A DNA stretch of 64,000 nucleotides, from the IMG/VR virus record IMGVR_UViG_3300008113_000003, positions 124,001-188,000 of that record, one strand, 5' to 3'. The notes under the pieces are model-generated. The model saw only the letters and a list, made by a program, of their open reading frames with translations, had not been told where the DNA came from and ran no database searches. The position numbers were made by a program, and so were the translations under genes. Below are positions 5,318 to 43,069 of this stretch, piece after piece (within the stretch, counting starts at the first letter, position 1; each line of letters begins with the position of its first letter).

Positions 5318-5325
5318 ATTAATAA

Positions 5326-8300: not shown

Positions 8301-11300
8301 CAAAGAAATCTTGTTCTAGATTTATTAGATCTCTTTCTCTTCTATCTGTGTTAGCAAAAGTTCTTTCATCATACACATCAGTGTTGGCGTAATAGTTAAA
8401 TGTTAATGCATTTTGTAATTGATCAACATATCTTCTTAAACCTTGCCCACCAATATATTTAAACGACATGTTGACTTTCGCTAACATTGGTTGTACACCA
8501 ATACCTTCTGGGTTTAAATCCCATAATAAAGGATCATAACTAATATTTAAACTATTAACTATGATTTTTGTGTGGTAAAAATCACCAATTCTTAAAACAG
8601 AAACTGGTGGTCTACCAAATGCCGTATTTTTAGCGTCACAACCTGGAACACCAATATCCTTTGTGATTGTATCACCAGGTCTCATACATTGCTGTAAAAA
8701 GGTTAATCTTGCATTTAAACCCTCGGGTGTCATTGCATGAAAAGCTGGACTAAAATATTTTAATTTTTGTTTTAAACTATCAAAAATAATAGGTGATTCC
8801 TCTGATAAATAATCGAAATAATCACACTCAGTTAATAGTTTATTAAGTATTCTTTGCGCTATTTCTCTTTTTGTTACGTTTGTTGTTGGTACCTCTTCTT
8901 CACGATACAATGGTGGCGTTTCAGCTGGTGGTTCTTTTCTTTCTAAAGGTATTTCTTTTGGAATCAAAGTTGCGTTAATTTCAACCCTTCTAGCAAAAGA
9001 CGCTATAGGTGATAAATTACCACAAACAATATCAGCCTCTCTTCTGGAAACTTGTTGGAAAGGTGCCGTATTAACAGCTATACATGTACCAATAAGTTGA
9101 CTATTTATCGGTGAAGTAATTCCAGCTGGTACCGATGGTATAAAATTATTTTTTACTTTATCAAACTCATCATAAGTTTTAACCATATAATAAGTTTTGT
9201 TGTCACCATAACTTATTGGAAAATATTCTATACCAGCAGATGTTTTTAGTGGTCTACCGAATAAAGTTGTATACTCATTTGGTTCTGGGTTTGTCTGAAA
9301 TAAATCATCAAGTGTTTGACCTCTTGAGACAATATCAAAACTGATTTCTTGTTTAGAATTAATATCACCCCTTAAGATAACAATTTTTTTAGATTTTTCT
9401 AAGTCACCGTGTAGTTTATTAACATCCGCTTCAGTTAATATAGGTTCACCATTTATTGTATAACATTTAACGTCATCATCAGACATGACATCAAGTATTA
9501 ACCATTTTGTAACCGAAACAAATCTTCTTGATGCTAATTTATCATTATATCTTTGTAATTCCGCTAAGTTTTGACCAGGAGCTGATGGTGATGCGTGTGC
9601 AACCATACTAAATCTTAAGTTATAGTCTTTAGTGCTTGCATAATTTTTCGCTGAATAAGCTTTTGCAATGTTTAAATACTGTTCCTCATAACCATAAGAT
9701 TTTCCAGGATAAGTTTTTCTATCCGTAGTAAAAAAGTGTTGGTGTTCTTTTGCCGCATTTGTACCTATTGTGTAATCGTATCTAATCCAAGCCAATCTTT
9801 CTGATGGGTCTAAGTTAGAACCACCGCCAACAGCAACTTCTTTAAACTCAGAGTTTTGATCGAGTTTTTGTCCTCTAGCTAAATTTTGATAGATATCATA
9901 ATAATCAGAATATTTGTCAACGACAAAATTCGCTTGATTTTTATACGAATTTTTTTGTATAGGGATGTCATTCTCAAAAAATAAGTTAAATTGTGTTATC
10001 TTTTGGGTTTCTAATTTCGGGGTTTCTATCGTAATACCTTCTTGTTTAAAGCTACCTGATGATTCAACTTTGGTTCTTATTTTTTCATTTGGTAATCTAA
10101 TATCCAAATCAGATATAACCTTTTTAAAATACTCAATATCACTATCACTAAACACACCCCATATTCTAGCTAATTCAAAAATATCGTAATCTAAACAACC
10201 TGCCCAGAAAGCTGCTAATAATTCATCAACTTCACCATCTGTTAATTGAGCAAATTCTTTATCTACTAATAAGTTCATTATTGTTGGGTGATCGACAACT
10301 ATATCCCATGACAATGTGCCAGATCTTTCTGTGTTGTTGTAGGTATAAATTGGTTCTGGTCTACCTAAAAATTGGTGTGTTGTCCAGTTTGTTGTTGTAT
10401 CATCTGTGAATCTAATATTGTATGGCGGGAACCACATTATTCTACCACCATTAGCACCCTTTTCACAAGGTGGTAATTCATTAAATTGAGATGAATCTCT
10501 CCAAGCTAAATTCTCAATGGAGAACATATATTTTCTGGCCCTTTTCTCACCAAAAGCCTCAACAACAGCGTCTCCAAGACCATCACCTAACCTACCGTAA
10601 CCTTCGTTAACGTTAAGCGCTGATGGGTGTATATTTAAGTTTCCGTATCTATCCAATACAGAATTTCTTTCTTTTCTATTTAACTCTTTCCATCTAATAA
10701 GATCCGTTATCTTTGAAAATGGTTTTGCTTTTGTCCAGGCTCTACAAAGAGTAACCTCATTGTACATTCTTTCGTCATCTCTTTTACCAGCTGTATCTAA
10801 ACCAGGTACTAAATAAGTGTACCCGATAACCTCATCTTTTTTATTTTTTCTTGGTGTTTTAAACGGTGTAATAACCCCAGAGCTTTTTGGGGAAAAATGA
10901 TAACCATCGGTAAATTTAGTTTTAGTTTGGTCAATAGATCTTATTGCACGATTACTTGTACCAGATTTCAATAATTGTTGTGTAACCCCCATTATTGAGC
11001 AATCTCTAAATCTACCAGTTGAGGTTGGGTCATTTGGATCCCCGCCCATTGTTCTGGATAATATATCATCGTCAAGTTTACCTAAAGAATCCCATTTAAG
11101 TACACCATTTTTACCGTCTTCTATTGTCCAACGTTGTTCATCAGTGCTACCTCTCCAAATAAATGATGTTTGTATTGATCCGTATTTAGAAACATTTTCA
11201 ACACCTGGTTCTACATAATAATCAGGAACACCATCGTTTATTCTAATAGACCTTGTTAATTCACTATTACTCTTAACTTGTAAACCGTTATTATCTTGTA

Positions 11301-14091: not shown

Positions 14092-14129
14092 ATATTATAA
14101 ATATTATTCAAATTGTTTTTTATTAAGAA

Positions 14130-16889: not shown

Positions 16890-16942
16890 ATATTAAATTT
16901 AATGATTATTGCTTAACTATAAATATTAAACATTCTGTTTTA

Positions 16943-22644: not shown

Positions 22645-25600
22645 TTATATGTTATCGAATGATACGTTTTGTGGAGTTACTGTAAATTCAAGTTCAATGA
22701 ATTCCAAAGTAGGTGTTGGTTTGATAAAGATTTTACCTTTTAAAGTATTTCTATCGTTATCTTCAACGTCCATTGCAACGCTAACTCTAAAGTCTGTTAA
22801 ACCTCTTTCTTTTCTGATGTTATCCAAGATTGGGTTAACCAAAGACAAGAATTGATTTCTAACTGTGGTATCATTTGGATCGAATAATAATCTCTTAGAT
22901 ACACTCATGATCAATCTTCTCGCTTGTAACAACAATCTTCTGATGTTCAATCTATCAAGAGCACTTGATTTAACCTGCAAGTTTCTGTTACCCCAGATAA
23001 CAACCCCAACGTCTGAATAAGTCGCTAATGGGTTAATTCTACCTGGATATAAAATATCTCTTGCTTCTTGGTCAAGAACTATACGAGCTCTATTACATTT
23101 AACTAAACCTCTATTGTAACCAGCAGTTGCAAACCAAGGGAACGCTACGTTATCTGTATAAGCCATATTTCTTACTACCTCAGCAGTAGGTGGGATATAC
23201 AAGTTTGCGTTATTGTCTGTATCTGTGATTTGTATCCAAGGATAGTAAACCGCAGTGTAGTTAGAATCGATGTCAGTGTTTTCTAATTCATCAACGATAT
23301 CTTCAGCAAAATACCAGTTTTCAGTATCTGATGGGTTGTTGTTGTTTAACAACTTGATATCAGGTAATGTTGGTAAATAAATCGCATCCAATCTCTTTTC
23401 TTCAACAACTTCAATAGCGTCTCTAACCAAATCAGTGTTGTTTAACACGTCAATACCAGGAGTTGCCAAGATGTTGATAGCGGTTTCTTCTGGGTTTTGG
23501 AATGTTCTGATACCGTACATTGTTGCATAGTAGTCAGAAGTACCGAATAACTCAGCGTACTCAACATTTGTAAATGTATCGAATGTACCAGCTACGAAAC
23601 CAGTTCTACCGATTTTGTACTCATCTGTGTTTGTTCTGTTAACTCTATAAGCATCCCAACCATCAAAACCACCAGCAAATAAAGCTGTGAATTTTCTTGT
23701 TCTCATGTTATTATAAGGGTGAGTTGTTGTTCCGTCAACCACAATTGGGTCAACAAATGAAGCAACACCAACCGCAAAAACTTGTTCTCCAGTAACAGAG
23801 TCAACAATGGTACTAGCATTGATATCCATGTGGAAACCTTTTGTTTTTGTTGTATAATCATCACCAGTATTGTAGGCGTTGTCACCTAAGATACTAATTT
23901 TACCTTTAAACAATAATAGGTCTTTATCAAATCCAAATTGGCTTGAGAAACCTAAATAGTTTTTAGTTACTCTATCACCACTAGAAACTGTAGCATTAGC
24001 AAATGGTGGGTTGTAAATTGTGTCACCAGGTGCATAATATTTCAATTTGTAAGGCATTTCAGGAACAGCTGTTGCTGTGTAACCACTAGCACTATTTGTT
24101 CTAAATTCGTAACCTTCAAAACCAGCTGGTACACCATCAGTTGGTGCGTTTACAGCCATTTCAAGAACAACATAAGCGCTCTTTAATGGGTATTTGTTAT
24201 CAATTGTACCTATTTTTCTACCAACGAAATTGTCTAATGACTCATCCATCGTACAATCAACAAATTTTTCAATTATTGATACAGCTCTATCTGTGTCGCT
24301 AAATGATCTGATGTAGATATCAAAAGTTTTCTTAGATAAATCAACATTAGCGATTGAAGCTTTGATTTCAGTGTTAGCACTTGTACCGTCAGAAATTGAA
24401 ATTAATCTGAATAATCTTTGTGGTAAACCACCTCTTAACTCAGATACAAAGAAAGGTGTTACTGGTGATTGATATTGGAATCTATAGTGATCCCAGTTAT
24501 TAACAGATGTTAATTCACTGTATAAACCTTTAATTTTACCACTTAACCAACCAAATTTCAGAGAGTTATCATAAACTTCCTCAACATAGATTTGAGAATC
24601 TTTGTCAGATGGTGTAGTACCGATTACTTTTTTGATATAGTTAGATTTTGTGCTATCTAAAGAAACTGTATAAGAGAATGTACCGCCAGTTGGGTTTGCT
24701 GTTGTACCAGTTAAATCAAAAGCTAAATATGGGTCGTTAACAACACCTGTTGGAGCGACCATATCTAATGAATTAACTTTATAACCTAACACATCTGAAG
24801 TGTAAGTACCTCTACTTCTAACGGTTGCAACGTTTTTGTTGTGACCTTCAGCGAAAGGATCAGCTGTTAACGTAACAGTGAACAATTCTAATTTACCGTT
24901 AAGTGTGTGAGCACCAGCACCTGTAAATGTATGGCAATATAAAGCAAATGATGGTCCACTGTATGTCTCGGTAGCGGTATTGTACGCTAACTCATTATTT
25001 AAAATATAAGCGTCTCTATCACTTGTTGGAACTGTGAACGGTAATTCATATGCGTCAATATAAACTGGGGTTATACCATGTGTAGCCGCATCAACCGTTA
25101 AATCAGTATCCATATCGTCAGTCAAAAGACCCCAATATAAAGCGTTTCCGTTATAGAAATCAGCATTAATGTAACTACCAACAGTTGTAAAGAATTGGTT
25201 AAACACGGTGTCAAAGTCAGTTGTAGCAACACCAGTTAAGTTAGCGATATAATCAATAAGATCGGTGTTACCAGAGTTACCAGTAACATAAAAACTATTG
25301 TTATTCGTGTCAACTTTAAAATTAATGGTTGTTTGTGTAATACCAGTGTGTGATAATGTTGATTCATCACATGCACCTAATGTTTTAATAACCCAAGCCA
25401 TACCAGCATCATAGCCAGATAATCCTAAAAGTCTTGTAACATACAATTGGTTTGATTGTGTTAAATACTGTTTTGCTATGTATGGTAATTCATACTTAAC
25501 AATTTGTGTATTTTTAAATTTTTCTGGATTAGTACCACCAAAAGTAGTCTTAAATTCATCAAAATTTCTGATGAATATTGGTTGGAACGCTGGACCCTTT

Positions 25601-25710
25601 AAGGTTTCACCCACTACACCTAATGTTGTAACACCAACTGTCTCAGTTGTGAATGTTAAATCTTTTTCGGTTGTGTAGACACCTGGAGATGCATAAACTT
25701 TGTTTGCCAT
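22645..25710 (-). CDS. Contractile tail sheath protein (T4 gp18-like) (1021 aa)
   Basis: N-terminal SPGVYTTEKD...VGETLKGPAF; C-terminal YYPW...PWFATAGYNRG...INP...WGNRNLQ..SSALDRLNIRRLL...EFIEL. Confidence 0.95.
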   Translation of the reverse strand: MANKVYASPGVYTTEKDLTFTTETVGVTTLGVVGETLKGPAFQPIFIRNFDEFKTTFGGTNPEKFKNTQIVKYELPYIAKQYLTQSNQLYVTRLLGLSGYDAGMAWVIKTLGACDESTLSHTGITQTTINFKVDTNNNSFYVTGNSGNTDLIDYIANLTGVATTDFDTVFNQFFTTVGSYINADFYNGNALYWGLLTDDMDTDLTVDAATHGITPVYIDAYELPFTVPTSDRDAYILNNELAYNTATETYSGPSFALYCHTFTGAGAHTLNGKLELFTVTLTADPFAEGHNKNVATVRSRGTYTSDVLGYKVNSLDMVAPTGVVNDPYLAFDLTGTTANPTGGTFSYTVSLDSTKSNYIKKVIGTTPSDKDSQIYVEEVYDNSLKFGWLSGKIKGLYSELTSVNNWDHYRFQYQSPVTPFFVSELRGGLPQRLFRLISISDGTSANTEIKASIANVDLSKKTFDIYIRSFSDTDRAVSIIEKFVDCTMDESLDNFVGRKIGTIDNKYPLKSAYVVLEMAVNAPTDGVPAGFEGYEFRTNSASGYTATAVPEMPYKLKYYAPGDTIYNPPFANATVSSGDRVTKNYLGFSSQFGFDKDLLLFKGKISILGDNAYNTGDDYTTKTKGFHMDINASTIVDSVTGEQVFAVGVASFVDPIVVDGTTTHPYNNMRTRKFTALFAGGFDGWDAYRVNRTNTDEYKIGRTGFVAGTFDTFTNVEYAELFGTSDYYATMYGIRTFQNPEETAINILATPGIDVLNNTDLVRDAIEVVEEKRLDAIYLPTLPDIKLLNNNNPSDTENWYFAEDIVDELENTDIDSNYTAVYYPWIQITDTDNNANLYIPPTAEVVRNMAYTDNVAFPWFATAGYNRGLVKCNRARIVLDQEARDILYPGRINPLATYSDVGVVIWGNRNLQVKSSALDRLNIRRLLLQARRLIMSVSKRLLFDPNDTTVRNQFLSLVNPILDNIRKERGLTDFRVSVAMDVEDNDRNTLKGKIFIKPTPTLEFIELEFTVTPQNVSFDNI

Positions 25711-27205: not shown

Positions 27206-28984
27206 ATGCAGTTACCGATAGAAAAGAGAGCGCTGGATATATTAAAAACATATAAAGGGTCAAATGACTACATATTGGGTATACAAAAGACCTACTTTAC
27301 GAGTAAAAGTTTTATACCAACAAAAAACCAAAGTGATTACATTATTAAAAACGGTAATGTTGATCCAGTTGTTGTTAACAAATTATTCGACATTAGTAAA
27401 TCTTGTAGACCTTTTATTGCTGAGCAATTAAAACTAGATTTTATACCAGACAAAATATTCATAAACAAATTACTTAGCAGAAAGGAGAACTTTTTACACA
27501 TTTATGGTTGTTTTGAAGAGGGTTGTGATCAATACTACACCTTCTATATTTCAAAGGAATGTGTTAAAGTTAGCAGACCTGAACCAGAAATTGACCCAAC
27601 AAAATATGAAAGGGACCCAAAACCGCACCAAATAACAGCGATTAAAAAATTATTGACAAACGATAAATTTATCTTGGCCGATGAAATGGGCCTTGGTAAA
27701 ACCACGTCAGCTATTATTGCGGCTATGGAAGGTCAATTCAAAAAAATATTGGTTGTTTGTCCAGCATCACTTAAACTTAACTGGAAAATTGAGATTTCAA
27801 ACTATGATTCTCCAGATAATATCAGTGTTGTTGACGGAAGTAATCTTACTGTAAAAAAATGGACAATTGTAAACTACGACATTCTTAAGAATTTTCACCA
27901 TTTACCTAGACGTGGTGTTAAAACAGCTGATCTACCTATTTCACCGATTGACTATCATAAATTTGATTTAGTTATTGCTGATGAAGCTCATTATCTTAAA
28001 AACGCTGCATCAAATAGAACCAAAATATTTAATGATTTTGCCATGAAAATACCAGTAAGATGGTTATTGACAGGTACTCCGATCACAAATAAACCAATCG
28101 ATTTCTATAATCTTTTATATTTGTGTGAATCACCTGTTGCCTCTAACTGGGTTGGTTATGTTAAAAGATATTGTGCTGGTAGACAATTTAACCGAAAAGG
28201 TACCAAACAAAAGTATTGGGTTTGTTCAGGATCATCAAACCTAGAAGAGTTGAAAGATTTTTCAGCCGATGTAATTTTAAGAAGAACTAAGAACGATTCT
28301 ATTGATTTACCACAAAAGACGATCAAACCTGTTTATTTACCACTAGAATTCTCAACTAGCTATAACGCCTATATTGATGAGTATGAAGCTTGGATTGAGG
28401 AAATGGAAGCTGCTGGTGAAAAACCAACAATTACCGATCACTTAACAAAATTGATCAAAGTTAGGCAGTTATTATCTTACGATAAGATTGCACACACAAT
28501 TGAAATGGCGGAAGAAATGTTGGAGAATGGTCAGAAAGTAATTATATTTAGTTGTTTTACAAACACAATCAAAGAGTTACAAGCTCATTTTGGTAAAAAA
28601 GCTGTGACAATTGATGGGTCGGTTTCAAAAGAAAAAAGACAACAAGCTGTTGATGCATTTCAAAATGATGATAAAATAACTGTTTTCTTGGGTAATATTG
28701 TAGCCGCTGGGGTTGGTTTAACTTTAACTGAAAGTAGCGTTGTAATATTCAATGATTTGGATTGGACACCAGCTAATCACATGCAAGCTGAGGATAGGGC
28801 ACATAGAATTGGTCAACAAAACCAGGTTCATATCATTTACCCATTATTTGCCGACACCTTAGATATGATTATGTATAAGGCGCTCCAAAGTAAAATGAAG
28901 ATTATTAGTACGATTATGGGTGATAACCCATCTGAAGAGGAAATATCAGTTGGTAAAGAGGTTATTATGCACCTTAGACGTTAA
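27206..28984 (+). CDS. SNF2-family (SMARCAL1/HARP-like) helicase/ATPase (592 aa)
   Basis: LADEMGLGKT, VVCPASLKLNW, DEAHYLKN, LLTGTPITN, FQND...AAGVGLTLT, DWTPANHMQAEDRAHRIGQ. Confidence 0.93.
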   Translation: MQLPIEKRALDILKTYKGSNDYILGIQKTYFTSKSFIPTKNQSDYIIKNGNVDPVVVNKLFDISKSCRPFIAEQLKLDFIPDKIFINKLLSRKENFLHIYGCFEEGCDQYYTFYISKECVKVSRPEPEIDPTKYERDPKPHQITAIKKLLTNDKFILADEMGLGKTTSAIIAAMEGQFKKILVVCPASLKLNWKIEISNYDSPDNISVVDGSNLTVKKWTIVNYDILKNFHHLPRRGVKTADLPISPIDYHKFDLVIADEAHYLKNAASNRTKIFNDFAMKIPVRWLLTGTPITNKPIDFYNLLYLCESPVASNWVGYVKRYCAGRQFNRKGTKQKYWVCSGSSNLEELKDFSADVILRRTKNDSIDLPQKTIKPVYLPLEFSTSYNAYIDEYEAWIEEMEAAGEKPTITDHLTKLIKVRQLLSYDKIAHTIEMAEEMLENGQKVIIFSCFTNTIKELQAHFGKKAVTIDGSVSKEKRQQAVDAFQNDDKITVFLGNIVAAGVGLTLTESSVVIFNDLDWTPANHMQAEDRAHRIGQQNQVHIIYPLFADTLDMIMYKALQSKMKIISTIMGDNPSEEEISVGKEVIMHLRR

Positions 28985-30199: not shown

Positions 30200-31291
30200 A
30201 TGAGAATAAATCCAACCGAAAAGCAAAAAATATACAAACAAGCCAAACATAGGCTTGGGGCTCCTATTAGGAAGATTCAATTAGAAGATGAACAAATGGA
30301 CTCACTTCTTGAAATCGCTACAGAAGATTATGTTGAGTTTATTAATAATTGGTTGATTGAACACCAATGGCCGAGTTTGATTGGTTTAAGCGTTAGCGAA
30401 GCTGATTTAACCAGGGCTTTTATTTATAGAACTTTTGATTTAGTCACACAATACACATACTCCTACTCAAAAATTGTTGGTTTGGGTGCTGGTGAGGGTG
30501 GTTATGTTCTTAAAAAAGATTACGTTGAGTTAGTTAAGGGTCAACAAATATATGAGATTCCAGCAAATAGAGAGATAAATGAAGTGTTATGGTTTACACC
30601 AGCTTCATTGGATCAATCTGTAATCGACCCATTCTTAGGTGTTTGGAACAATCAATTCGGTGCCGAATATATGGGTTTGGGTAGTTATTACATTTTACCA
30701 GCTTTTGACATTTTAATGAGAACAACGGATAGAAACCTTAAAAATAGGATGATTCGTTCTGAGTTAATATATAAGATCACAAATGCGCCTGATGGCAAAA
30801 AATATCTTCATTTAATGAATACGCCAGGTGGTAAATTTGACTTTAGGGGTTCAATGCTAGATCAAGGTAAATGTTGGTATTGGTATTATGATATTAACCC
30901 ATTAATTAAAGATGATTGTTTGGCAAAAAACAAAGATATCATTAAATCACCAGCTGATGTTCCTCTGGATGATATATCATTTGATGACCTAAATGATCCA
31001 GCTAAAGTTTGGATTAGAAGATATTTTATTGCTTTGTGTAAAGAAACTTTGGGTAGAGTAAGAGGTACTTTTGGTGGTAAAATACCAGTTCCAGACGCAA
31101 ATATGGAAATTGAATACCAGTCACTTTTATCAGAAGGTAAGGATGAAATGGTTACACTTAAAAAAGAATTAGAGGACAGAATGTTCAAATTAAACCCATT
31201 GGAAATTCTTAAAAGAATGTCTACTGAGGCTGAAGAAATTAACAAAGCTCTTAAATACAGAGCGTTCCAAAAACCAATTAAGATTATATAA
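30200..31291 (+). CDS. Neck / head-tail adaptor (T4 gp13-like), about 363 aa; start at 30200 preferred
   Basis: HRLGAPIRKIQLEDEQM..LLEIA; WIRRYFIALCKETLGRVRG.FGG.IP. Confidence 0.75.
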   Translation: MRINPTEKQKIYKQAKHRLGAPIRKIQLEDEQMDSLLEIATEDYVEFINNWLIEHQWPSLIGLSVSEADLTRAFIYRTFDLVTQYTYSYSKIVGLGAGEGGYVLKKDYVELVKGQQIYEIPANREINEVLWFTPASLDQSVIDPFLGVWNNQFGAEYMGLGSYYILPAFDILMRTTDRNLKNRMIRSELIYKITNAPDGKKYLHLMNTPGGKFDFRGSMLDQGKCWYWYYDINPLIKDDCLAKNKDIIKSPADVPLDDISFDDLNDPAKVWIRRYFIALCKETLGRVRGTFGGKIPVPDANMEIEYQSLLSEGKDEMVTLKKELEDRMFKLNPLEILKRMSTEAEEINKALKYRAFQKPIKII

Positions 31292-32946
31292 TGTTTTATA
31301 CAGCCCTAGATAATAGTGATTATTTTGATTTAATTGTCACAAAAGATTGTCGTGATTTTTATCGTGATTATAACGAATGTAATTTAATAAATATTAATAT
31401 TACTGAAAATCTATGCTCAATACCTGGGAGTATTCAAACAGAAGAAGTTGAATTAAAAAACATAACGTTAACAGGTTATGATAATTTTTTTATACCCAAC
31501 GGAGAGATATCAAATATCAATAATTTCACGGGTGACACAATAGGATACACTGTGAATGAAAATATTGTTGTTGACGTTAATAAAGATTTAACATATGTTA
31601 TTGAAACTGGTGATACTTTTTGTTTTCATGAAATATCTGGTTATAGCGGAAATTACTGTTATGAGATTGATCACCTAAATGTTGACAATGGTATATACTA
31701 TAATAAATTAAATGGCGGTTTTTACCAGGGATTCTACAAAATTTTTGGTGAAAATGTTGAGTGGTTCCCAGCTAGAGCAAAAATGGGTTGGACCGTTGAT
31801 ATGGTTGTCCATTTCCCAATGGATGTACCAGGTAGTTCAGGGTCATCTGGTAGTTCAGGGTCTTCTGGATCATCTGGCAGTTCTGGTTCTTTTGGGTCTT
31901 CTGGATCATCAGGTAGTTCTGGGTCATCTGGTAGTTCAGGGTCTTCTGGATCATCTGGTAATTGCGTAACTCTAAATAAAGTATATCCAAATAATAGCGG
32001 TTTTATTTTTTATCTGGGGACAAGAGCTGAAAATAAATTTGCTGATAAAACTGATATTGAAATTCAAAGATTTGAGGATAATTACGACATAGTACCTCTA
32101 AACACAACAAATTTATTTACCTATAATAACCTAATAACATTAAATGGTTTAACGAATTATATTGGTTATTTTAATTATTATAATGGTTTAATGTATACTG
32201 GTAGAAATTATACAGTAGACTCACAACCTTTACAATACCACCAAGAATATAGTGATCTCACGTATAATGCGTTTGGTATAAGAGTCACCAATGATGGTAG
32301 AATCGGTTACAGAACAATATACCCAACTGATATATGTTATACAGGCGTAACCCAAGAAGTTAGTGGTATAACAAACAACTCGTTTATTATGGACCCAATT
32401 GATGACTGTGTTAATTATACAAGATCACTAATTGTTACAAAATATTTTACAATAGAGGAGTGTTATACAAAAAACCCTGTTATTGATGTAACGGAAAATA
32501 AATTCTTGAATATAACTGGTGTATTTGAAAGAGATTTTTCTTATGGGAATAACTGTCAGTTAAAATATGGTGATTATAAAAAAGGTACCTTCTCAATATA
32601 CCTTAATGGGTTCTTAGTTTTTAGGAATAGGAATTTTGTTGAGGTGATACCACATGAATTAGATATTGATTCGAAATACCAGGAAGGTGTCCCCTTTAAT
32701 ATTTCATTTGGTGGTGGGACCCAAAGCTTAATCGACCCTGTGGTATTTGATGAAAACAAAGTACTTGGTACTGTTTTAGAAAGATTTTTTGCTGGAACAT
32801 TCCTAGGTGGTGTTAAATCAATTAAAATGTATTGTGTACCATTGTACACTGTTGAGGTTAAAAAAGAATTTAGAAATATTGCGGGTATATATAATTTGCC
32901 GATAATAAAGGGTGGTAGACAGATATTTATAAAAAATTTATTCTAA
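31291..32946 (+). CDS. Hypothetical virion protein with an internal (Gly-Ser-Ser)n tract (551 aa)
   Basis: TAATG coupling to the neck gene; beta-rich, possibly LamG-like C-terminal part (weak). Confidence 0.7.
   Translation: MFYTALDNSDYFDLIVTKDCRDFYRDYNECNLININITENLCSIPGSIQTEEVELKNITLTGYDNFFIPNGEISNINNFTGDTIGYTVNENIVVDVNKDLTYVIETGDTFCFHEISGYSGNYCYEIDHLNVDNGIYYNKLNGGFYQGFYKIFGENVEWFPARAKMGWTVDMVVHFPMDVPGSSGSSGSSGSSGSSGSSGSFGSSGSSGSSGSSGSSGSSGSSGNCVTLNKVYPNNSGFIFYLGTRAENKFADKTDIEIQRFEDNYDIVPLNTTNLFTYNNLITLNGLTNYIGYFNYYNGLMYTGRNYTVDSQPLQYHQEYSDLTYNAFGIRVTNDGRIGYRTIYPTDICYTGVTQEVSGITNNSFIMDPIDDCVNYTRSLIVTKYFTIEECYTKNPVIDVTENKFLNITGVFERDFSYGNNCQLKYGDYKKGTFSIYLNGFLVFRNRNFVEVIPHELDIDSKYQEGVPFNISFGGGTQSLIDPVVFDENKVLGTVLERFFAGTFLGGVKSIKMYCVPLYTVEVKKEFRNIAGIYNLPIIKGGRQIFIKNLF
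31831..31959 (+). repeat. About 14 tandem Gly-Ser-Ser triplets (9-bp degenerate coding repeat)
   Basis: ggtagttcagggtcatct... repeated; translation GSSGSS...GSFGSS...G. Confidence 0.95.
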
Positions 32947-33393: not shown

Positions 33394-36300
33394 ATGATTA
33401 TGGCCGAATACAAGATTTCCCTTGAAGAGATAGAAAAGTTTTTAAATGGGCACGATGATGAGAAATACATCGTGAATGTTGAGTACGATGCCGAAACTAA
33501 TCTGATCCATAAAGTTAAACAAGATCCAGAAAGGGGTAATTATATTGAAACCGAACCATTACTCGCTTTCATGTGGATTAAAAACCTTAATAAAATTAAG
33601 GAACTAACCAATTTTTACGGTAATAGTGATGCCAAAATTAAGTCCGCTAGACAAAGATTTGGTATTGAAATCAAAGCTTTAGGTGGTGACCACCCAAAGT
33701 TAATTGACGGTTATAGGTATTTGGTTACATGTAATCAGGGTCACAAAAGAATGTTAGATTTTTTTAGAGAGGGTGGTATTTTTGTTTACGACAAAAGACA
33801 TGATATTAACACTCATTTCTTAATGATATCACCTGTCGAGCAGTATTTTATACATACTGGTAAGCGTTTGTTTAAGGGATTTGAAGAATACGATGAGATT
33901 CACAAATTTATATTTGACTTAGAGACAACAGGGTTAGACCCAGCCATCAATCGTATTTTCTTGATTGGTATCTACACCAATTTAGGCGTTAGAGAAATCA
34001 TACCCGTTGAAGATGATGATGAATCTGAAAGACAAGCCATTACAAAATTCTTTGAGAAAATTAATGAGATTAAACCAACCATCATTGCTGGTTATAATAG
34101 TGCAAACTTTGACTGGCCATTCTTCTTTAAAAGATGTGAAATTCTTGGTTTAAATATTCAGGATATCGCAATTACCTTAAAAGTTGGTGAATTAATCAAC
34201 AACAAAGATAGTATTTTAAAGCTGGGTAACGAGGTTGAGGACTACACCCAAACTAATATGTTTGGTTATAGCGTTATCGATATCATACACTCAGCTAGAC
34301 GTGCACAAGCAATTGATTCAAGCATGAAATCGGTTGGTTTGAAATATGTTTGTAAGTATAACAAGATTGCAAAAAAGAATCGTGTTTATATTGTTGGTGA
34401 TAAAATTGGTAACACATGGTACTCAAAAGATAAATTTTATTTTGATGATAGAACAGGTGCCTACTCTAAAACAAAACCAGCTTTGGAGTTCATGGATTAC
34501 ATTCGTAGAGAAGATGTTCAGGCTAACCCAGATAAAGTGTTTGTTTTTGGTGATAATATTTTAAGACAAGGACTTGGCGGTCAGGCAAAAGAAATGCGTG
34601 GAGAACCGAATGTCATTGGTATCGTAACCAAGCACACCCCAGAATCAACACCAGAATCTTATTTCAATGATAAGGATTTTGAAATACTTAAAAAACACAT
34701 AGATTCCGATATTAATCAAATAATCGAAAAGATTAAAGAAGGTAAGACAATCGTTTTCCCTAAAATGGGTATCGGTACAGGTTTGGCTCAGTTAGATATG
34801 AGAGCCCCAAAAACATTCAAGTATCTAAAGGGTTTATTAAGTGCGTTACGTGATTACATTAATACTTTTCAAGAAGTTGATGGTAGATATATCGTTGAGC
34901 GTTACTTGATTGATGACTTATGGGAAACTATGGAAGTGGACGATGTTTATAACCAGTCATCGTTCTTGTTAGCTAAATTAGTACCAACAACATATCAAAG
35001 GGTTTCTACCATGGGTACAGCTGGTCTATGGAAATTATTGATGATGACGTATTCATTTGAAAATGATTTGGCAATACCAGTATCGGATGTTAAAAGAGAT
35101 TACACAGGTGGTTTATCAAGATTATTTAAAGTTGGTTATTCAACCACTTTAAGAAAGATGGACTACAACTCACTTTACCCAGCTATTCAGTTGGCCCATG
35201 ATGTATTCCCAAGTGTTGATGTTAACGGTGCGATGAAATCGATGTTAAAGTATTTCCACACCGAACGTTTTAAAGCTAAAAACTTAGCCAGCAAATACAA
35301 AAAAGAAGGTAATTACCAATTGGCTGACAAATATAAACGTAAACAATTACCACTTAAGATCTTTATTAACTCGATGTTCGGTGCCCTTGGTGCACCTATG
35401 GCTTTCCAATGGGCTGAAATTGATGTCAGTGAACGTATTACTTGTACGGCAAGACAATACTTAAGATTAATGGTTACATTCTTCCTTAAACGTGGGTACA
35501 CGCCTTTAGTACTTGATACGGATGGTGTTAACTTCATGGCACCAAAGAACGGTGAGCCATTTACCTATATCGGTAAGGGTTTAAATGATGAGGTTGAAGC
35601 TGGTAAAGAATATACTGGTGTTAAAGCTGTGGTAGCTGAATTTAATGACACCTATATGCGTGGTGAGATGGGTCTTGGTTTAGATGGTATTTGGCCAGCG
35701 ACAATTAACTTATCTAGGAAAAATTACGCTTTACTAGAAGATGACGGGTCAATTAGTTTAACTGGTAACAGTATCAAATCAAAAGCTATGCCCGTTTACA
35801 TTGAAGAGTTTTTGGGTAAGGGTATGAAAATGTTATTGAATGGTCATGGCTATGAGTTTGTACAATATTACTACGAATACGCTGAGAAAGTGTGTAATAG
35901 AGAAATACCTTTAGCTAAGATTGCCACAAAAGCTAGGGTTAAGAAGTCGATAAATGCTTATATAAATCGTGGTGGTGATAAAAATGGTAAGCAGTTGGCA
36001 AAACAAGCTCACATGGAGTTGGCAATAAAACATAATCTTGATGTTAATCTTGGTGATACAATTTATTATGTTAATAATGGTAAAACAAAATCACATGGTG
36101 ATGCCCAAGAAAATAAGGATGGGGAAATGTATGCAACATTGGTACCAAATGAAATTATTGAAAACCAACCAGATTATATTGGTGAATACAATGTACCTAA
36201 ATATTTAGAAGCCTTAAATAAAAAGGTTGAACCTTTATTAGTTGCGTTTCCACTTGAAGTTAGAGATAAAATTTTAATTAAAAAATCTGGCGAAAGAACA

Positions 36301-36498
36301 ATGTTCTTAAGATCTGAGTTAGATTTGGTAAACGACCAACCTACAGATATTGAAGACCAAGACACTTTAGAAGAATTTTTTACCCCATCTCAAATGGAAA
36401 AAGAATTCTGGGCTAAAATGAATTATGAATCAGATTATTGGTTTTCAGATAAAATAACTTTCAAAATACCTGGTTTAGACGAAGAATTTACGGTATAG
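33394..36498 (+). CDS. polB: Family B DNA polymerase with an inserted extra domain (1034 aa)
   Basis: ExoI FDLETTGL, ExoII YNSANFD, ExoIII YLIDD; Pol motifs DYNSLYP, KIFINSMFG, DTDG; insertion at about aa 367-482. Confidence 0.95.
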   Translation: MIMAEYKISLEEIEKFLNGHDDEKYIVNVEYDAETNLIHKVKQDPERGNYIETEPLLAFMWIKNLNKIKELTNFYGNSDAKIKSARQRFGIEIKALGGDHPKLIDGYRYLVTCNQGHKRMLDFFREGGIFVYDKRHDINTHFLMISPVEQYFIHTGKRLFKGFEEYDEIHKFIFDLETTGLDPAINRIFLIGIYTNLGVREIIPVEDDDESERQAITKFFEKINEIKPTIIAGYNSANFDWPFFFKRCEILGLNIQDIAITLKVGELINNKDSILKLGNEVEDYTQTNMFGYSVIDIIHSARRAQAIDSSMKSVGLKYVCKYNKIAKKNRVYIVGDKIGNTWYSKDKFYFDDRTGAYSKTKPALEFMDYIRREDVQANPDKVFVFGDNILRQGLGGQAKEMRGEPNVIGIVTKHTPESTPESYFNDKDFEILKKHIDSDINQIIEKIKEGKTIVFPKMGIGTGLAQLDMRAPKTFKYLKGLLSALRDYINTFQEVDGRYIVERYLIDDLWETMEVDDVYNQSSFLLAKLVPTTYQRVSTMGTAGLWKLLMMTYSFENDLAIPVSDVKRDYTGGLSRLFKVGYSTTLRKMDYNSLYPAIQLAHDVFPSVDVNGAMKSMLKYFHTERFKAKNLASKYKKEGNYQLADKYKRKQLPLKIFINSMFGALGAPMAFQWAEIDVSERITCTARQYLRLMVTFFLKRGYTPLVLDTDGVNFMAPKNGEPFTYIGKGLNDEVEAGKEYTGVKAVVAEFNDTYMRGEMGLGLDGIWPATINLSRKNYALLEDDGSISLTGNSIKSKAMPVYIEEFLGKGMKMLLNGHGYEFVQYYYEYAEKVCNREIPLAKIATKARVKKSINAYINRGGDKNGKQLAKQAHMELAIKHNLDVNLGDTIYYVNNGKTKSHGDAQENKDGEMYATLVPNEIIENQPDYIGEYNVPKYLEALNKKVEPLLVAFPLEVRDKILIKKSGERTMFLRSELDLVNDQPTDIEDQDTLEEFFTPSQMEKEFWAKMNYESDYWFSDKITFKIPGLDEEFTV

Positions 36499-40753: not shown

Positions 40754-41338
40754 ATGAACGATAGATTAGAAAATTTAAACATGGACGATCTTTTTGATGA
40801 TGAAACCAAAAATGAACTGGATAATATCCTAAAACAAACCCAACATATGATGGGTGATTGGGATTATGATCCAAATGACATGACAATTAAATTAAAGGTT
40901 TCTTTTATTAATAAATCAAATAACCCCGATCCAACTTATGAAAAAGAGGGTGATAGTGGTTTTGATATCAGAGCGAATAATGATAAAACGATTGAAATTG
41001 AGCCTGGACACAGAGCTTTAATACCAACAGGCTTGTATTTTGAAATACCCATGGGTTATGAATTACAAGTTAGGTCCAGAAGTGGACTTGCATTAAAAAA
41101 TGGTATTATGGTTTTAAATAGCCCTGGCACCGTTGATTCTGGTTATAGGGGTGAGGTTGGTGTTATTTTACATAACTCAGATAAATCAGCACCTTTTTAT
41201 GTTCACAAAGGTGATAGAATAGCACAAGGTGTTATCGCTGCTGTACAAACAATGGGTAAAACTAAATTTATAAAAACAAACGAACTATCAAGTAGCGACA
41301 GAGGTACTGGTGGTTTCGGATCAACTGGTATTAATTAA
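40754..41338 (+). CDS. dut: Trimeric dUTPase (194 aa)
   Basis: SGFDI, RSRSGLA, GTVDSGYRGEV, GDRIAQ, RGTGGFGSTG. Confidence 0.95.
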   Translation: MNDRLENLNMDDLFDDETKNELDNILKQTQHMMGDWDYDPNDMTIKLKVSFINKSNNPDPTYEKEGDSGFDIRANNDKTIEIEPGHRALIPTGLYFEIPMGYELQVRSRSGLALKNGIMVLNSPGTVDSGYRGEVGVILHNSDKSAPFYVHKGDRIAQGVIAAVQTMGKTKFIKTNELSSSDRGTGGFGSTGIN

Positions 41339-41643
41339 TGGTAGTATTTAAAGATCAAATAAAAGCTTATAAAGCGATCACACAAGATATCTTAAACCAG
41401 ATAGAATATAAAACTGTTTGGTCTGGTAAAAGAATTGAGGTGGGTGATAAAGTTTTGTACGCATTTGTATACCCTTTAAATTCAGAGGACTATAAATTAG
41501 CAACGTTCCTTGAACGTGAATTAGATGAAGTTAACCAAATCTTCACCTATGTACAAACAATAAAAGGTATTATACCTGTATTAAAATATAAAAATGATAA
41601 TCTTGTGAGAGATTTAATCATAGAGGAAGAGGATGAGTCATAA
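41338..41643 (+). CDS. Hypothetical protein (101 aa)
   Basis: TAATG-coupled to dUTPase. Confidence 0.7.
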   Translation: MVVFKDQIKAYKAITQDILNQIEYKTVWSGKRIEVGDKVLYAFVYPLNSEDYKLATFLERELDEVNQIFTYVQTIKGIIPVLKYKNDNLVRDLIIEEEDES

Positions 41644-43069
41644 AATTAGTATCGTTTTCTCAACGAGAAAAATAGAAAATAGTTTCATTGAACATGTTAA
41701 AAAAACATGTATGTATAAGGGTGTTGAAGTTTTGCCTTATGAAAATAAGGGTGAATATTCTTTAACCGAAATATATAATAAGGGTTTAAACGAGGCATCA
41801 AGCGATATTGTTATTTTTTGTCATGACGATATCTTGTTTGAAACAAAAAATTGGGGTGAAAAAGTTTTAAAAGCTTTTGAAAAAAACCCTGAATATGGTA
41901 TTCTTGGTGTTGCTGGTACTAACCACATGATTAGTGGTATGTGGTGGGAAGTGCGTAATGCGATGCATGGAACTGTTAAACATACCGATGGTGTAAAAAC
42001 ATGGACAAACAAATACTCCGCAAATTACGGCAACCAATTAAAAGAAATGGTTGCTGTTGACGGTTTATTTATTGCTGTTAATAAGGCCAAAATAGAAAAT
42101 GTTTTTGATGATAGATTTAAAGGTTTTCATTTTTATGATATATCATTTTGTTTATCAAACCATATTAACGGTGTCAATATTGGGTTAATATCAAATATAA
42201 CAATATTACATAAATCTGTTGGCCAAGTTAATGAACAATGGATGGAAAATAAAACTTTGTTTGAAGAAATATATGGCGATAAATTACCTATTTGTTTAAA
42301 CGAAGAAACAAAACATATTATCTTCGATAAAGAATTACCAAAGATTGATATGCATGTTCTTTGTTGGAATGAGGAAAAGATTATACCATACTTCTTAAAT
42401 CACTATGAAAATTTTGTTACAAACATTATTGTTTACGATAATAAATCAAATGATAACACCAATAAACTTTTAAAAGCGCACCCAAAGGTTACTATTATAC
42501 CTTATGACACAAATGGGGAAATAAGAGATGACGCTTATCTTCAAATAAAAAACAACGCCTGGAAAAATTCAATCGGTAAAGCTGATATTGTTATAGTTTG
42601 CGATATGGATGAATTTTTGTATGCGGAAGATTTTAAATCAGCGATTATTGAGTTTAATAACAGCGATGCCACGATAGTTAAACCAACTGGGTATGATATG
42701 ATTGTTTCTGATTTTAATTTTGATTATACAAATAAATTAACAGACCTTGTTAAAACTGGTTATAAAAACAACCTCTTTGATAAGATGGTTATGTTTAAGA
42801 CAAAAAACATAACTGATATGAATTATAACGGTGGTTGTCACGTAGCGGCACCTAGAGGTAACAAAGTTAGTCTATTTGAAAATAAATTCTTATTACTACA
42901 TTATAAAAGACTTGGGTTAAAATATTTTTTAAATAAAATGTCTGCTTACAGAAAAAGGTTAAGTGATTTTAATAAAAAATATAAGCTTGGTTATGAATAT
43001 GAATTTGATAACAATAAACATACCGAAGATTTTAATGAGTCTTTAAATAAAATAGTTGAGGTTATTTAA
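41633..43069 (+). CDS. Two-domain GT-A family glycosyltransferase (478 aa)
   Basis: N-terminal domain IFCHDDI...GVAG...VDGLFIA...FHFYD; second domain LCWNEE..IPYFL.HY...VYDN.S.D...CDMDEF. Confidence 0.75.
   Translation: MSHKISIVFSTRKIENSFIEHVKKTCMYKGVEVLPYENKGEYSLTEIYNKGLNEASSDIVIFCHDDILFETKNWGEKVLKAFEKNPEYGILGVAGTNHMISGMWWEVRNAMHGTVKHTDGVKTWTNKYSANYGNQLKEMVAVDGLFIAVNKAKIENVFDDRFKGFHFYDISFCLSNHINGVNIGLISNITILHKSVGQVNEQWMENKTLFEEIYGDKLPICLNEETKHIIFDKELPKIDMHVLCWNEEKIIPYFLNHYENFVTNIIVYDNKSNDNTNKLLKAHPKVTIIPYDTNGEIRDDAYLQIKNNAWKNSIGKADIVIVCDMDEFLYAEDFKSAIIEFNNSDATIVKPTGYDMIVSDFNFDYTNKLTDLVKTGYKNNLFDKMVMFKTKNITDMNYNGGCHVAAPRGNKVSLFENKFLLLHYKRLGLKYFLNKMSAYRKRLSDFNKKYKLGYEYEFDNNKHTEDFNESLNKIVEVI

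What the first reader, a model, noticed from the sequence alone, without database searches (positions are those of the whole stretch)
34492..34839. Macrodomain-like (DUF7831-type) domain inserted inside the proofreading exonuclease of the phage DNA polymerase
Seen: aa ~367-482 of PolB (MDYIRREDVQANPDKVFVFGDNILRQGLGGQAKEMRGEPNVIGIVTKHTP...YFND...IVFPKMGIGTGLAQLDMRAPKTFKYL) lie between ExoII (aa ~234) and ExoIII (YLIDD, aa ~504). The insert begins with its own Met, has no intein hallmarks, and all Exo/Pol catalytic motifs are intact. Known from motif memory: this matches, end to end, a family of small standalone phage/bacterial proteins (I..R.D..ANP...(Y/F)VFGDN..R.G.GGQA..MRGEPN..GI.TK; DUF7831-like). 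Its G.GGQA loop and P.(M/D)GIGTGLA loop resemble the two ADP-ribose-binding loops of macrodomains such as DarG/TARG1. DarT toxins of DarTG anti-phage systems ADP-ribosylate ssDNA and stall phage replication. Inference: a captured gene fused into the polymerase, giving a replisome-tethered eraser or sensor of ADP-ribosylated DNA, i.e. a built-in anti-defence module. I know of no described polymerase with this architecture.
Basis: partly seen in the sequence, partly recalled or inferred. Interest (0 to 1): 0.85.

Follow-up and report, generated by a model that had tools for sequence, protein, structure and literature searches.

The report
Unknown-function domain inside phage DNA polymerase
A jumbo phage's replicative DNA polymerase carries, inside its proofreading domain, an intact copy of a small widespread viral domain of unknown function (DUF7831). 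That domain elsewhere travels with enzymes that process ADP-ribose, so it may be a built-in counter-defence module, but it is not a recognisable macrodomain.

Summary
The 1034-aa family B polymerase (33394-36498, +) holds a full-length DUF7831 domain (Pfam E = 2.6e-44, aa 365-479) between ExoII and ExoIII. All exonuclease and polymerase motifs are intact.

The same domain exists as about 120-200-aa standalone proteins (743 hits). Sister polymerases of 919-948 aa have only a short linker at this site.

In this phage's lineage the insert is as constrained as the polymerase core (dN/dS 0.03-0.07). In at least 4-6 other polymerase lineages its 20 family-invariant residues have decayed, so it is an accessory function.

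The macrodomain reading is not supported:
- Foldseek found no PDB match at E <= 1e-3 and no macrodomain in the top 50.
- No Macro hit appeared in Pfam.
- hhalign against a Macro profile gave 0.2% probability.

The ADP-ribose idea gains independent support from context:
- In other viral proteins DUF7831 is fused to NADAR, SLOG (cpYpsA, DprA-like), DUF4326 and DUF488 domains, to helicases, and to giant virion proteins.
- Standalone copies sit next to NAMPT/NMNAT-Nudix and PARG genes in some phages.

Best reading: an uncharacterised nucleotide- or ribose-phosphate-binding enzyme or sensor, tethered beside the exonuclease site, acting against ADP-ribose-type interference with replication. The biochemistry is untested.

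The parts
33394..36498 (+). Family B (archaeal-type) replicative DNA polymerase gene, 1034 aa, no in-frame stop
   Evidence: ORF listing. Pfam DNA_pol_B_exo1, RNase_H_2 and DNA_pol_B. PHROG 262 DNA polymerase. AF2 model with pLDDT 88.7 matches KOD/9N/Tgo/Pfu polymerases at E about 1e-30.
34486..34848 (+). DUF7831 domain insert (aa 365-485; Pfam match aa 365-479)
   Evidence: Pfam E = 2.6e-44. 743 standalone homologues. AF2 pLDDT 93 alone and 74-92 in context with the same secondary structure. dN/dS 0.03-0.07. It is the only DUF7831 copy in the window.
34546..34557 (+). FGDN motif at the end of strand 1 of the insert (aa 385-388), family-invariant
34576..34611 (+). GGQAKEMRGEPN: first Gly-rich loop, short helix and the loop before strand 2 (aa 395-406), mostly invariant
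34768..34788 (+). GIGTGLA: second Gly-rich loop at a helix N-terminus (aa 459-465); probable phosphate-binding loop
   Evidence: A local motif match to the phosphate-gripping loop 6 of triosephosphate isomerase, E = 0.04, is motif-level only.
33913..33933 (+). ExoI motif FDLETTG (aa 174-180)
   Evidence: D175 and E177 invariant.
34093..34122 (+). ExoII motif (aa 234-243)
   Evidence: N235, F239 and D240 invariant; aligned to ExoII of P. abyssi PolB.
34903..34917 (+). ExoIII motif YLIDD (aa 504-508), in helix 497-519, which begins 12 residues after the insert ends
35158..35526 (+). Polymerase motifs A (aa 589-596), B (655-663) and C (DTDG, 708-711)

Best explanation
The insert is an intact DUF7831 domain kept under selection. 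DUF7831 is a compact alpha/beta domain. Two glycine-rich loops sit at helix N-termini, and a ring of invariant polar residues (D387, N388, Q397, R402, E404, N406, plus nearly invariant K399, E400, T412, K413, D426, T462) lies at the C-terminal edge of a small parallel sheet. That is the usual layout of a site for a phosphorylated ribose or nucleotide.

The domain is a mobile accessory module of large phages and giant viruses. Its fusion partners and neighbours place it in the viral toolkit that processes NAD+/ADP-ribose derivatives.

Here it was inserted into the surface loop just before the ExoIII helix of an archaeal-type family B polymerase. The host is a roughly 206-kb myovirus with T4-like morphogenesis genes. 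Polymerisation and proofreading do not need the insert.

Most likely it recognises or removes an ADP-ribose-type (ribose-phosphate) adduct, or an ADPr-derived molecule, at the replication fork. Replication could then continue in hosts whose defences ADP-ribosylate DNA or act through NAD-derived products.

Shown: domain identity, integrity, purifying selection, optionality, repeated decay, and the association network. Inferred: the ligand, catalysis, and the counter-defence role.
For: Identity and integrity:
- Pfam E = 2.6e-44 with all 20 family-invariant residues kept.
- The fold prediction is confident, both alone and inside the polymerase, with short connectors to the exonuclease domain.

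Selection: in close relatives with intact motifs, the insert's dN/dS of 0.03-0.07 equals that of the rest of PolB.

Accessory nature:
- The insert is absent from a syntenic sister group of phages and from distant outgroups.
- Its motifs have decayed at least 4-6 times independently, including in polymerases 77-83% identical to this one.

ADPr/NAD network:
- Of 42 multidomain DUF7831 proteins, 7 carry DUF488-N3a, 4 NADAR, 3 cpYpsA SLOG and 2 DUF4326.
- Minimal fusions exist: DUF4326+DUF7831 in 236 aa, and DUF7831+cpYpsA.
- One protein combines a DprA-like SLOG, DUF7831 and a Dda helicase.
- 6 of 74 viral cpYpsA loci carry DUF7831 in the same frame.
- 4 of 29 dereplicated standalone loci lie within 4 kb of NAMPT + NMNAT-Nudix, and one is immediately followed by a PARG gene.
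- Iyer et al. 2022 (PMC9503650) describe the same partner set (SLOG, Macro, NADAR, DUF4326) as the phage ADPr-processing toolkit, with the same spread across phages and giant viruses (for giant-virus DUF7831).

Other support:
- DUF7831 is embedded in giant virion proteins (phrog_16227), which fits deployment early in infection.
- The polymerase is a known point of conflict with DarT: SECphi18 escapes DarTG2 through DNA polymerase mutations (PMC11825919).
Against: - There is no biochemical datum for any DUF7831 protein.
- The fold could not be assigned to any known ADPr-binding superfamily.
- The association evidence is guilt by association. Giant polyvalent proteins hold many unrelated domains, and NadV is common in large phages (22-33% of them).
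- Other recurrent neighbours point elsewhere: SNF2 helicase, rIIA/B, metallophosphatase, RNA ligase, RtcB and a tRNA nucleotidyltransferase suggest general early, replication or RNA-repair modules.
- No NAD/ADPr gene was found in the 64-kb window.
- The spatial relation of the insert to DNA could not be measured, because the tools return no coordinates.
Confidence: 0.4

Rival explanations
1. One reading: the insert is a divergent macrodomain, homologous to DarG/TARG1-type erasers, and removes ADP-ribose from DarT-modified ssDNA.
For: There is a motif-level resemblance: a strand ending in FGDN followed by a GGQA helix start, and a P..GIGTG loop. This recalls the NAAN...GGG and G.G loops of macrodomains (plus memory of macrodomain motifs). 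The ADPr-related context is as listed for the best explanation.
Against: - Foldseek with a pLDDT-93 model gave no PDB hit at E <= 1e-3 and no macrodomain in the top 50 of PDB or BFVD, although both libraries hold many macrodomains.
- Pfam at E <= 10 shows no Macro family for any of 46 members.
- An A1 profile search of PDB sequences finds no macrodomain.
- hhalign against a Macro alignment gives 0.2% probability; that alignment was shallow, so this test is weak.
- The domain has about 116 aa and about 4 strands, against the 6-7-stranded, 130-190-aa macro fold.
Confidence: 0.06
2. The domain is a non-catalytic sensor. It binds an NAD+/ADPr-derived or other nucleotide signal made during host defence and allosterically tunes proofreading or polymerisation, or holds the ligand as a sponge.
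For: - Iyer et al. 2022 propose this logic for SLOG domains fused to 3'-5' exonucleases, SF1 helicases and other nucleic-acid enzymes.
- DUF7831 is fused to PolB and to a Dda/PIF1-type helicase.
- The short, rigid connection to the ExoIII helix would suit allosteric coupling.
Against: Twenty invariant residues, many of them charged or polar, across about 50%-identical sequences look more like an active site than a binding pocket. The partners NADAR, DUF4326 and DUF488 are enzymes.
Confidence: 0.2
3. The domain is a phosphoesterase or end-processing enzyme unrelated to ADP-ribose. It might remove a 3'-blocking phosphate or another group from primer ends, or clean nucleotides, beside the proofreading site.
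For: - The weak top Foldseek hits are cysteine phosphatases (Tk-PTP E = 0.013, DUSPs, MKP5) and CbiL-type methylases. From memory, Burroughs and Aravind 2023 place these in one rhodanese-phosphatase superfamily together with DUF488 and DUF4326 (that paper is not held).
- The second Gly-rich loop resembles a phosphate-gripping loop.
- Neighbours include metallophosphatase, RNA ligase, RtcB and a CCA-adding enzyme.
- The insert ends 12 residues before the ExoIII helix.
Against: - The Foldseek scores are insignificant (TM 0.3-0.4, rmsd about 8 A).
- There is no catalytic Cys or CX5R loop.
- By eye the DUF4326 sequence shows no similarity to DUF7831.
Confidence: 0.15
4. The insert is now only a structural or protein-docking subdomain of the polymerase, for example for a clamp, helicase or SSB, and its original chemistry is irrelevant.
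For: Several polymerase lineages keep an insert of similar length after losing nearly all family-invariant residues. Something other than the pocket therefore keeps the body in place.
Against: - In the window's lineage every invariant residue is kept and dN/dS matches the catalytic core.
- Lineages that lost the motifs show 3-4 times faster amino-acid change in the insert. This implies the intact ones are held by an additional constraint.
- A whole clade works with a roughly 9-residue linker.
Confidence: 0.1

Closest known systems
Standalone DUF7831 proteins (Pfam PF25176; PHROG 2072), e.g. Caulobacter phage phiCbK gp184 (AFO71699.1) and giant-virus homologues
   Same: Same domain end to end, 40-57% identical, same invariant residues and same predicted fold (TM 0.88-0.92 to BFVD models).
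   Different: Those are free proteins of 120-220 aa, all annotated as hypothetical. Here the domain is an internal insertion in a polymerase.
Macrodomain ADP-ribose erasers (DarG2, TARG1, YmdB) and phage DarG2-like anti-DarT proteins
   Same: Possibly the same kind of job, handling ADP-ribose adducts. Both have two Gly-rich loops after strands. Both co-occur with SLOG, NADAR and DUF4326 in viral proteins.
   Different: No detectable sequence or fold relationship. DUF7831 is smaller, with about 4 strands. The known ones are not fused to polymerases.
NADAR DNA ADP-ribosylglycohydrolases (DarG1, phage AdfN)
   Same: A phage-encoded enzymatic counter to DNA ADP-ribosylation is an established strategy (PMC11825919). 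NADAR is fused to DUF7831 in 4 of 42 multidomain proteins.
   Different: A different, helical fold. AdfN is a free protein. No activity is known for DUF7831.
[quoted passage not shown]
   Same: Same host range (large phages plus giant viruses of microbial eukaryotes), same fusion partners and direct fusions with DUF7831. The weak Foldseek hits fall in the same superfamily.
   Different: DUF4326 has a Cys-rich signature that DUF7831 lacks. Homology was not shown.
Archaeal family B polymerases (KOD, 9N, Tgo, Pfu) with the N-terminal uracil read-ahead pocket
   Same: Closest solved polymerases (E about 1e-30). They are a precedent for a replicative PolB carrying its own detector of a template-strand lesion (established knowledge).
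   Different: Their sensor is a pocket in the N-terminal domain, not an inserted foreign domain. They lack anything at the pre-ExoIII loop and are about 250 aa shorter.
Inteins in family B polymerases
   Same: Foreign sequence inside a polB reading frame. One relative (P0173) has a true intein as well.
   Different: There is no Hint or LAGLIDADG domain, no Cys/Ser at the N-terminal junction and no HN plus nucleophile at the C-terminal junction. The insert is predicted to stay in the mature protein as a folded domain.

Membership tests
DUF7831 (PF25176) | HMM match above the gathering score over the whole model | tested here: met
   150 bits against a cut-off of 27, model positions 2-116 of 118.
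DUF7831 (PF25176) | Family-invariant residues (FGDN, G..GGQA..MRGE.N..G, P, P..G.G.G, P) | tested here: met
   20 of 20 kept.
Family B DNA polymerase with 3'-5' exonuclease | ExoI/II/III and polymerase motifs A/B/C present with catalytic residues; PolB fold | tested here: met
Macrodomain | Sequence-profile membership (Pfam Macro families or profile-profile match) | tested here: not met
   No Macro family at E <= 10 for 46 members. hhalign against a YmdB-type alignment gives 0.2% probability; the Macro alignment was shallow. A profile search of PDB sequences finds none.
Macrodomain | Three-layer alpha/beta/alpha fold with a 6-7-stranded mixed sheet | tested here: not met
   The AF2 model has about 4 strands. 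Foldseek finds no macrodomain in the top 50 of PDB or BFVD and nothing at E <= 1e-3 in PDB.
Macrodomain | Binds ADP-ribose or hydrolyses ADPr conjugates | not testable with these tools
   Needs biochemistry.
SLOG superfamily (YpsA/cpYpsA, LOG, DprA) | Profile or fold similarity to SLOG domains | tested here: not met
   hhalign against 54 viral cpYpsA sequences gives 0.27% probability. No YpsA, LOG or DprA structure appears in the Foldseek top 50. An apparent 93% hit was an artefact of DUF7831 residues in the template.
Rhodanese-phosphatase superfamily (PTP/DSP, DUF4326, DUF488) | Fold similarity plus an active-site loop between a strand and a helix (CX5R or a variant) | tested here: inconclusive
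   The best Foldseek hits are PTPs/DSPs and CbiL, but at E = 0.013-1 and TM 0.3-0.4. There is no catalytic Cys.
Intein | Hint domain, N-terminal Cys/Ser, C-terminal His-Asn plus Cys/Ser/Thr | tested here: not met
   No Hint or intein Pfam hit. The junctions read ...LEF|MDY... and ...SAL|RDY....
Anti-DarT counter-defence factor | Neutralises DarT or removes ADPr from DNA | not testable with these tools
   Context only.

The most novel reading that the evidence does not exclude
DUF7831 is a new, non-macro, non-NADAR class of enzyme that removes ADP-ribose-type adducts. In this phage lineage it is built into the proofreading domain of the replicative polymerase, so the replisome erases defence-inflicted DNA ADP-ribosylation (DarT-like) in cis as it meets it. 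This would be the first polymerase with an integrated anti-defence eraser.
Probability: 0.2. Interest if true: 0.9.

Novelty: new variant of a known kind. Interest (0 to 1): 0.7.

Why it matters
DUF7831 is large: 2587 clusters at 50% identity. It is highly conserved, spans phages, prophages and giant viruses, and has no known function or paper.

This polymerase shows the domain physically coupled to the replication machinery and under strong selection. Its repeated decay in sister lineages marks it as an arms-race accessory rather than core machinery.

The fusion network (NADAR, SLOG, DUF4326, DUF488, helicases, virion cargo proteins) gives a concrete, testable hypothesis about NAD+/ADP-ribose-based immunity and how replisomes cope with it.

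If the domain is an eraser or sensor at the fork, that would add a new enzyme family to ADP-ribose biology and a new principle, defence evasion built into a polymerase. If it turns out to be a phosphoesterase or a docking module, it would still explain an abundant viral 'dark matter' family.

Tried and rejected
- **Macrodomain homology.** Rejected by Foldseek against PDB and BFVD, Pfam at E <= 10, an A1 profile search of PDB sequences, and hhalign against a YmdB alignment. The Macro alignment was shallow (70-99% identity), so that last test is weak on its own.
- **SLOG homology.** By eye, the motifs 'DGTVWFG-N..GG..LT..A..GKP' and 'FVFGDN..G.GGQAKEMRGEP' look alike. A first hhalign gave 93%, but the template accidentally included DUF7831 residues from P0371. 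Clean alignments gave 0.2-0.3%.
- **DUF4326 relationship.** The sequence was inspected and shows no obvious similarity. An iterative HMM found only 4 fusions.
- **PDB sequence search.** It returned only a local match to TIM loop 6.
- **Domain tree for a single capture into PolB.** The tree is unresolved: 6 changes, with starred branches forcing only 2.
- **Gain versus loss of the insert.** With very long outgroup branches the root falls on an open polytomy. The insert-less clade is sister to an intact-insert polymerase (97*). This favours loss but does not show it.
- **Isoelectric point** of family members was uninformative.
- **Gene fission.** A standalone DUF7831 gene next to polB was looked for in the insert-less phage; none lies within 10 kb.
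- **Literature.** No paper mentions DUF7831, PF25176 or phrog_2072. Burroughs and Aravind 2023 on the rhodanese-phosphatase superfamily is not held, so statements about it rest on memory.
- **Spatial position of the insert.** It could not be measured because models are returned without coordinates.
Full report
**1. What is there**

The + strand ORF 33394-36498 encodes a 1034-aa protein with no internal stop.
- Pfam finds DNA_pol_B_exo1 (aa 210-318), RNase_H_2, DNA_pol_B, and between them DUF7831 (PF25176). The DUF7831 match is at aa 365-479, E = 2.6e-44, 150 bits against a cut-off of 27, covering positions 2-116 of the 118-position model.
- PHROGs gives phrog_262 (DNA polymerase) plus phrog_2072 (unknown function) for the insert.
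- The exonuclease motifs are ExoI aa 174-180, ExoII 234-243 and ExoIII 504-508. The polymerase motifs are A 589-596, B 655-663 and C 708-711. Their catalytic residues are invariant in a 43-sequence alignment.
- The closest solved relatives are archaeal family B polymerases, by sequence and by fold (AF2 pLDDT 88.7, Foldseek E about 1e-30 to KOD/9N/Tgo/Pfu).
- The rest of the window encodes a T4-type portal, terminase, tail tube, baseplate and sheath, PhoH, dUTPase, an SNF2 helicase and several glycosyltransferases.
- Identical DNA occurs on IMG/VR contigs of up to 206 kb. The source is therefore a jumbo myovirus, AT-rich at 32% GC.

**2. A captured, optional, complete domain**

- The excised segment finds 743 proteins, nearly all 113-206 aa, at 45-57% identity over their whole length.
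- Twenty columns are invariant in a 46-sequence alignment, and the window copy has all of them.
- An exhaustive profile search finds 2587 clusters at 50% identity.
- Related polymerases fall into three states:
  - an intact insert, with 18-20 of 20 invariants, down to about 50% polymerase identity;
  - an insert of similar length whose motifs are largely gone (2-14 of 20);
  - no insert, with a short linker (919-948 aa).
- Distant phage PolBs (Salinibacter and Nostoc phages) also lack the insert.
- Insert GC and GC3 match the gene. The architecture recurs in more than 60 clusters from ENA, JGI, NCBI and Logan. Chimeric assembly is therefore excluded.
- There are no intein features.

**3. Selection**

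- Against close relatives with intact motifs, the insert's dN/dS is 0.03-0.07. The rest of the polymerase gives the same 0.03-0.07.
- In lineages where motifs are eroding or lost, the insert changes 3-4 times faster than the rest (dN 0.32-0.39 against 0.08-0.15). dS there is near saturation, so these ratios are rough.
- On polymerase trees built without the insert columns, 'decayed' needs 7-8 changes, of which well-supported branches force 4-6.
- The nearest decayed group is 77-83% identical to the window's polymerase.
- The insert-less clade is sister to an intact-insert polymerase (97-100% support). With very distant outgroups the root falls on an unresolved polytomy. Secondary loss is therefore favoured but not shown.
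- Together this marks a function that is strongly maintained where present but dispensable for replication itself.

**4. Fold**

- AF2 on the domain with 46 homologues gives pLDDT 93 and pTM 0.85. The order of elements is a short strand, helix, strand (ending FGDN), Gly-rich loop and short helix (GGQAKEM), strand, long helix, strand, Gly-rich loop (GIGTGLA), and two helices.
- The same pattern appears inside the full-length model at pLDDT 74-92, with short connectors. The last domain helix (aa 472-489) leads through a 4-residue strand into the ExoIII helix (aa 497-519).
- Foldseek against PDB gives nothing at E <= 1e-3. The best hits are cysteine phosphatases (Tk-PTP E = 0.013, TM 0.37), DUSPs, CobU, Get3 and CbiL. 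No macrodomain, SLOG, UDG or Toprim protein is among the top 50.
- Against BFVD the only significant hits are other DUF7831 proteins. These come from giant viruses (Hyperionvirus, Tupanvirus, Yasminevirus), Caulobacter and Rhizobium phages, and pieces of huge crAss-like phage proteins.
- Pfam at E <= 10 on 46 members gives only DUF7831.
- A profile search of PDB sequences gives only a local match of P..GIGTGLA to the phosphate-gripping loop 6 of triosephosphate isomerase (E = 0.04).
- hhalign gives 0.2% against a Macro alignment and 0.27% against 54 viral cpYpsA SLOG domains.
- The domain is therefore a small Rossmann-like alpha/beta unit that these tools cannot place in a superfamily. The macrodomain label fails every test I could run.

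**5. Context**

Standalone genes are always annotated 'hypothetical' (102 phage records, mostly large alphaproteobacterial phages). Examples:
- phiCbK: rIIA-rIIB-DUF7831...N-glycosylase...SNF2 helicase.
- RcXuper and a 271-kb contig: metallophosphatase-DUF7831 with HicA nearby.
- Erythrobacter phage XM05: primase, RtcB, DUF7831, phosphoesterase.
- A Bradyrhizobium prophage: DUF4326-YAcAr(SLOG), dCMP deaminase, MT-A70, DUF7831, DndB.
- A 297-kb contig: DUF7831 immediately followed by a microbial PARG, then NMNAT-Nudix and NAMPT.

Among 29 dereplicated IMG/VR loci, the recurrent neighbours within 4 kb are SNF2 helicase (7 loci), rII-like genes (4-5) and the NAMPT + NMNAT-Nudix pair (4).

Fusions are more telling.
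- Of the 150 best representatives, 92 are free, 27 are mid-sized and 31 exceed 1300 aa, up to 6835 aa.
- In 42 multidomain members Pfam finds DUF488-N3a in 7, NADAR in 4, cpYpsA in 3 and DUF4326 in 2. It also finds SF1 helicases, P-loop kinases (AAA_33, Zeta toxin) and Phage_Mu_F.
- Minimal fusions include DUF4326+DUF7831 in 236 aa and DUF7831+cpYpsA.
- One 1800-aa protein combines a DprA-like SLOG, DUF7831 and a Dda helicase.
- One giant host protein is a virion structural protein (phrog_16227).
- Reciprocally, 6 of 74 viral cpYpsA loci carry DUF7831 in frame.

Iyer et al. 2022 describe this same partner set (SLOG, NADAR, Macro, DUF4326) as the phage apparatus for processing ADPr derivatives. 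They note that it is often virion-packaged and is shared between large phages and giant viruses. They also note SLOG fusions to 3'-5' exonucleases and SF1 helicases (PMC9503650). They do not mention DUF7831 or a polymerase insertion, and neither does the jumbo-phage survey from the same group.

**6. Mechanism**

The two Gly-rich loops at helix N-termini, and the invariant Asp, Asn, Gln, Arg, Glu and Asn (with nearly invariant Lys, Glu, Thr, Lys, Asp and Thr) at the C-terminal edge of the sheet, are the standard geometry for binding a phosphate-bearing ribose or nucleotide and doing chemistry on it. This is inference from the model and from general knowledge of Rossmann-like folds.

The insertion point corresponds to the loop before the ExoIII helix of archaeal PolBs. 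This places the domain about a dozen residues of chain from the catalytic Tyr/Asp of ExoIII.

In RB69 and archaeal PolB structures the 5' template overhang runs between the N-terminal and exonuclease domains. This is established knowledge recalled from memory. Reach to template or primer ssDNA is therefore plausible but unmeasured.

DNA ADP-ribosylation by DarT blocks replication. Phages counter it with free NADAR or DarG-like enzymes or inhibitors, and one phage escapes through polymerase mutations (PMC11825919).

My preferred reading (confidence about 0.4) is an accessory module that recognises or removes an ADP-ribose-type adduct or derivative at the fork. The rivals are:
- a ligand sensor regulating the enzyme (0.2);
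- a phosphoesterase or end-cleaning activity unrelated to ADPr (0.15);
- a structural or docking subdomain (0.1);
- a true macrodomain (0.06).

**7. Novelty and verdict**

The domain family is catalogued as a DUF, and the polymerase architecture is visible in automatic annotation. I found no description of either in the literature available here.

I file the finding as a new variant of known kinds: a family B polymerase with a foreign accessory domain, and an additional member of the viral NAD/ADPr-associated domain network.

The macrodomain interpretation is not supported. The ADP-ribose/counter-defence idea is strengthened by independent contextual evidence but remains untested.

Noticed in passing
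PolB homologues P0125-P0135, P0173, P0183-P0185, P0199, P0201-P0204: Several polymerase lineages keep an insert of nearly the same length after losing most DUF7831 invariant residues. These 'fossil' domains include close relatives, 77-83% identical outside the insert.
   Followed up: yes
P0173 (1392 aa): A polymerase of the same family carries a true intein (LAGLIDADG_3 and Intein_splicing hits) as well as a decayed DUF7831 insert.
   Followed up: no
L027, L032, L042, L044, L054, L071, L079, L082, L088, L089; P0363, P0410, P0501 and others: DUF7831 lies inside giant viral ORFs of 1500-6835 aa. One matches a 4401-position 'virion structural protein' PHROG. BFVD hits point to crAss-like phages. 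Most of these proteins have no other recognisable domain.
   Followed up: partly
P0361 (300 aa): A protein with two matched DUF7831 stretches.
   Followed up: no
window 31291-32946 (+): A 551-aa ORF two genes upstream of polB with a long (GSS)n tract that scores as a collagen-like repeat. Probably a fibre or baseplate-associated protein.
   Followed up: no
window 2065-19516 (-) and 22645-25710 (-): A run of very large ORFs (979, 2921, 919 and 857 aa) with no Pfam hit, next to an unusually long (1021 aa) tail sheath protein.
   Followed up: partly
window 39532-63220 (+), e.g. 41633-43069: Several glycosyltransferase genes (GT2, WbsX-type, RgpF-type) sit among replication and morphogenesis genes, together with dUTPase/DCD (40754-41338), PhoH and a Vsr-like endonuclease. 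The related phages L166 and L167 share this set.
   Followed up: partly
window 27206-28984 (+): An SNF2-family helicase lies 4.4 kb upstream of polB; it is 86% identical to the SNF2 protein of L167. SNF2 helicases are also the commonest neighbour of standalone DUF7831 genes (7 of 29 loci). This is possibly just shared membership of replication modules.
   Followed up: partly
L006:4887-6050: A TnpB (OrfB_IS605/Cas12f-like) gene in a 271-kb phage-like contig, a few genes from DUF7831.
   Followed up: no
L004 (Bradyrhizobium chromosome): A prophage early region beside an integrase. It combines a DUF4326-YAcAr protein, a dCMP deaminase, an MT-A70 methylase, DUF7831 and two DndB-like genes. One source labels the DUF7831 protein '5-methylthioribose kinase' (UNVERIFIED), which looks like a mis-annotation.
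   Followed up: no
The polymerase ORF has no in-frame stop.
   Followed up: yes
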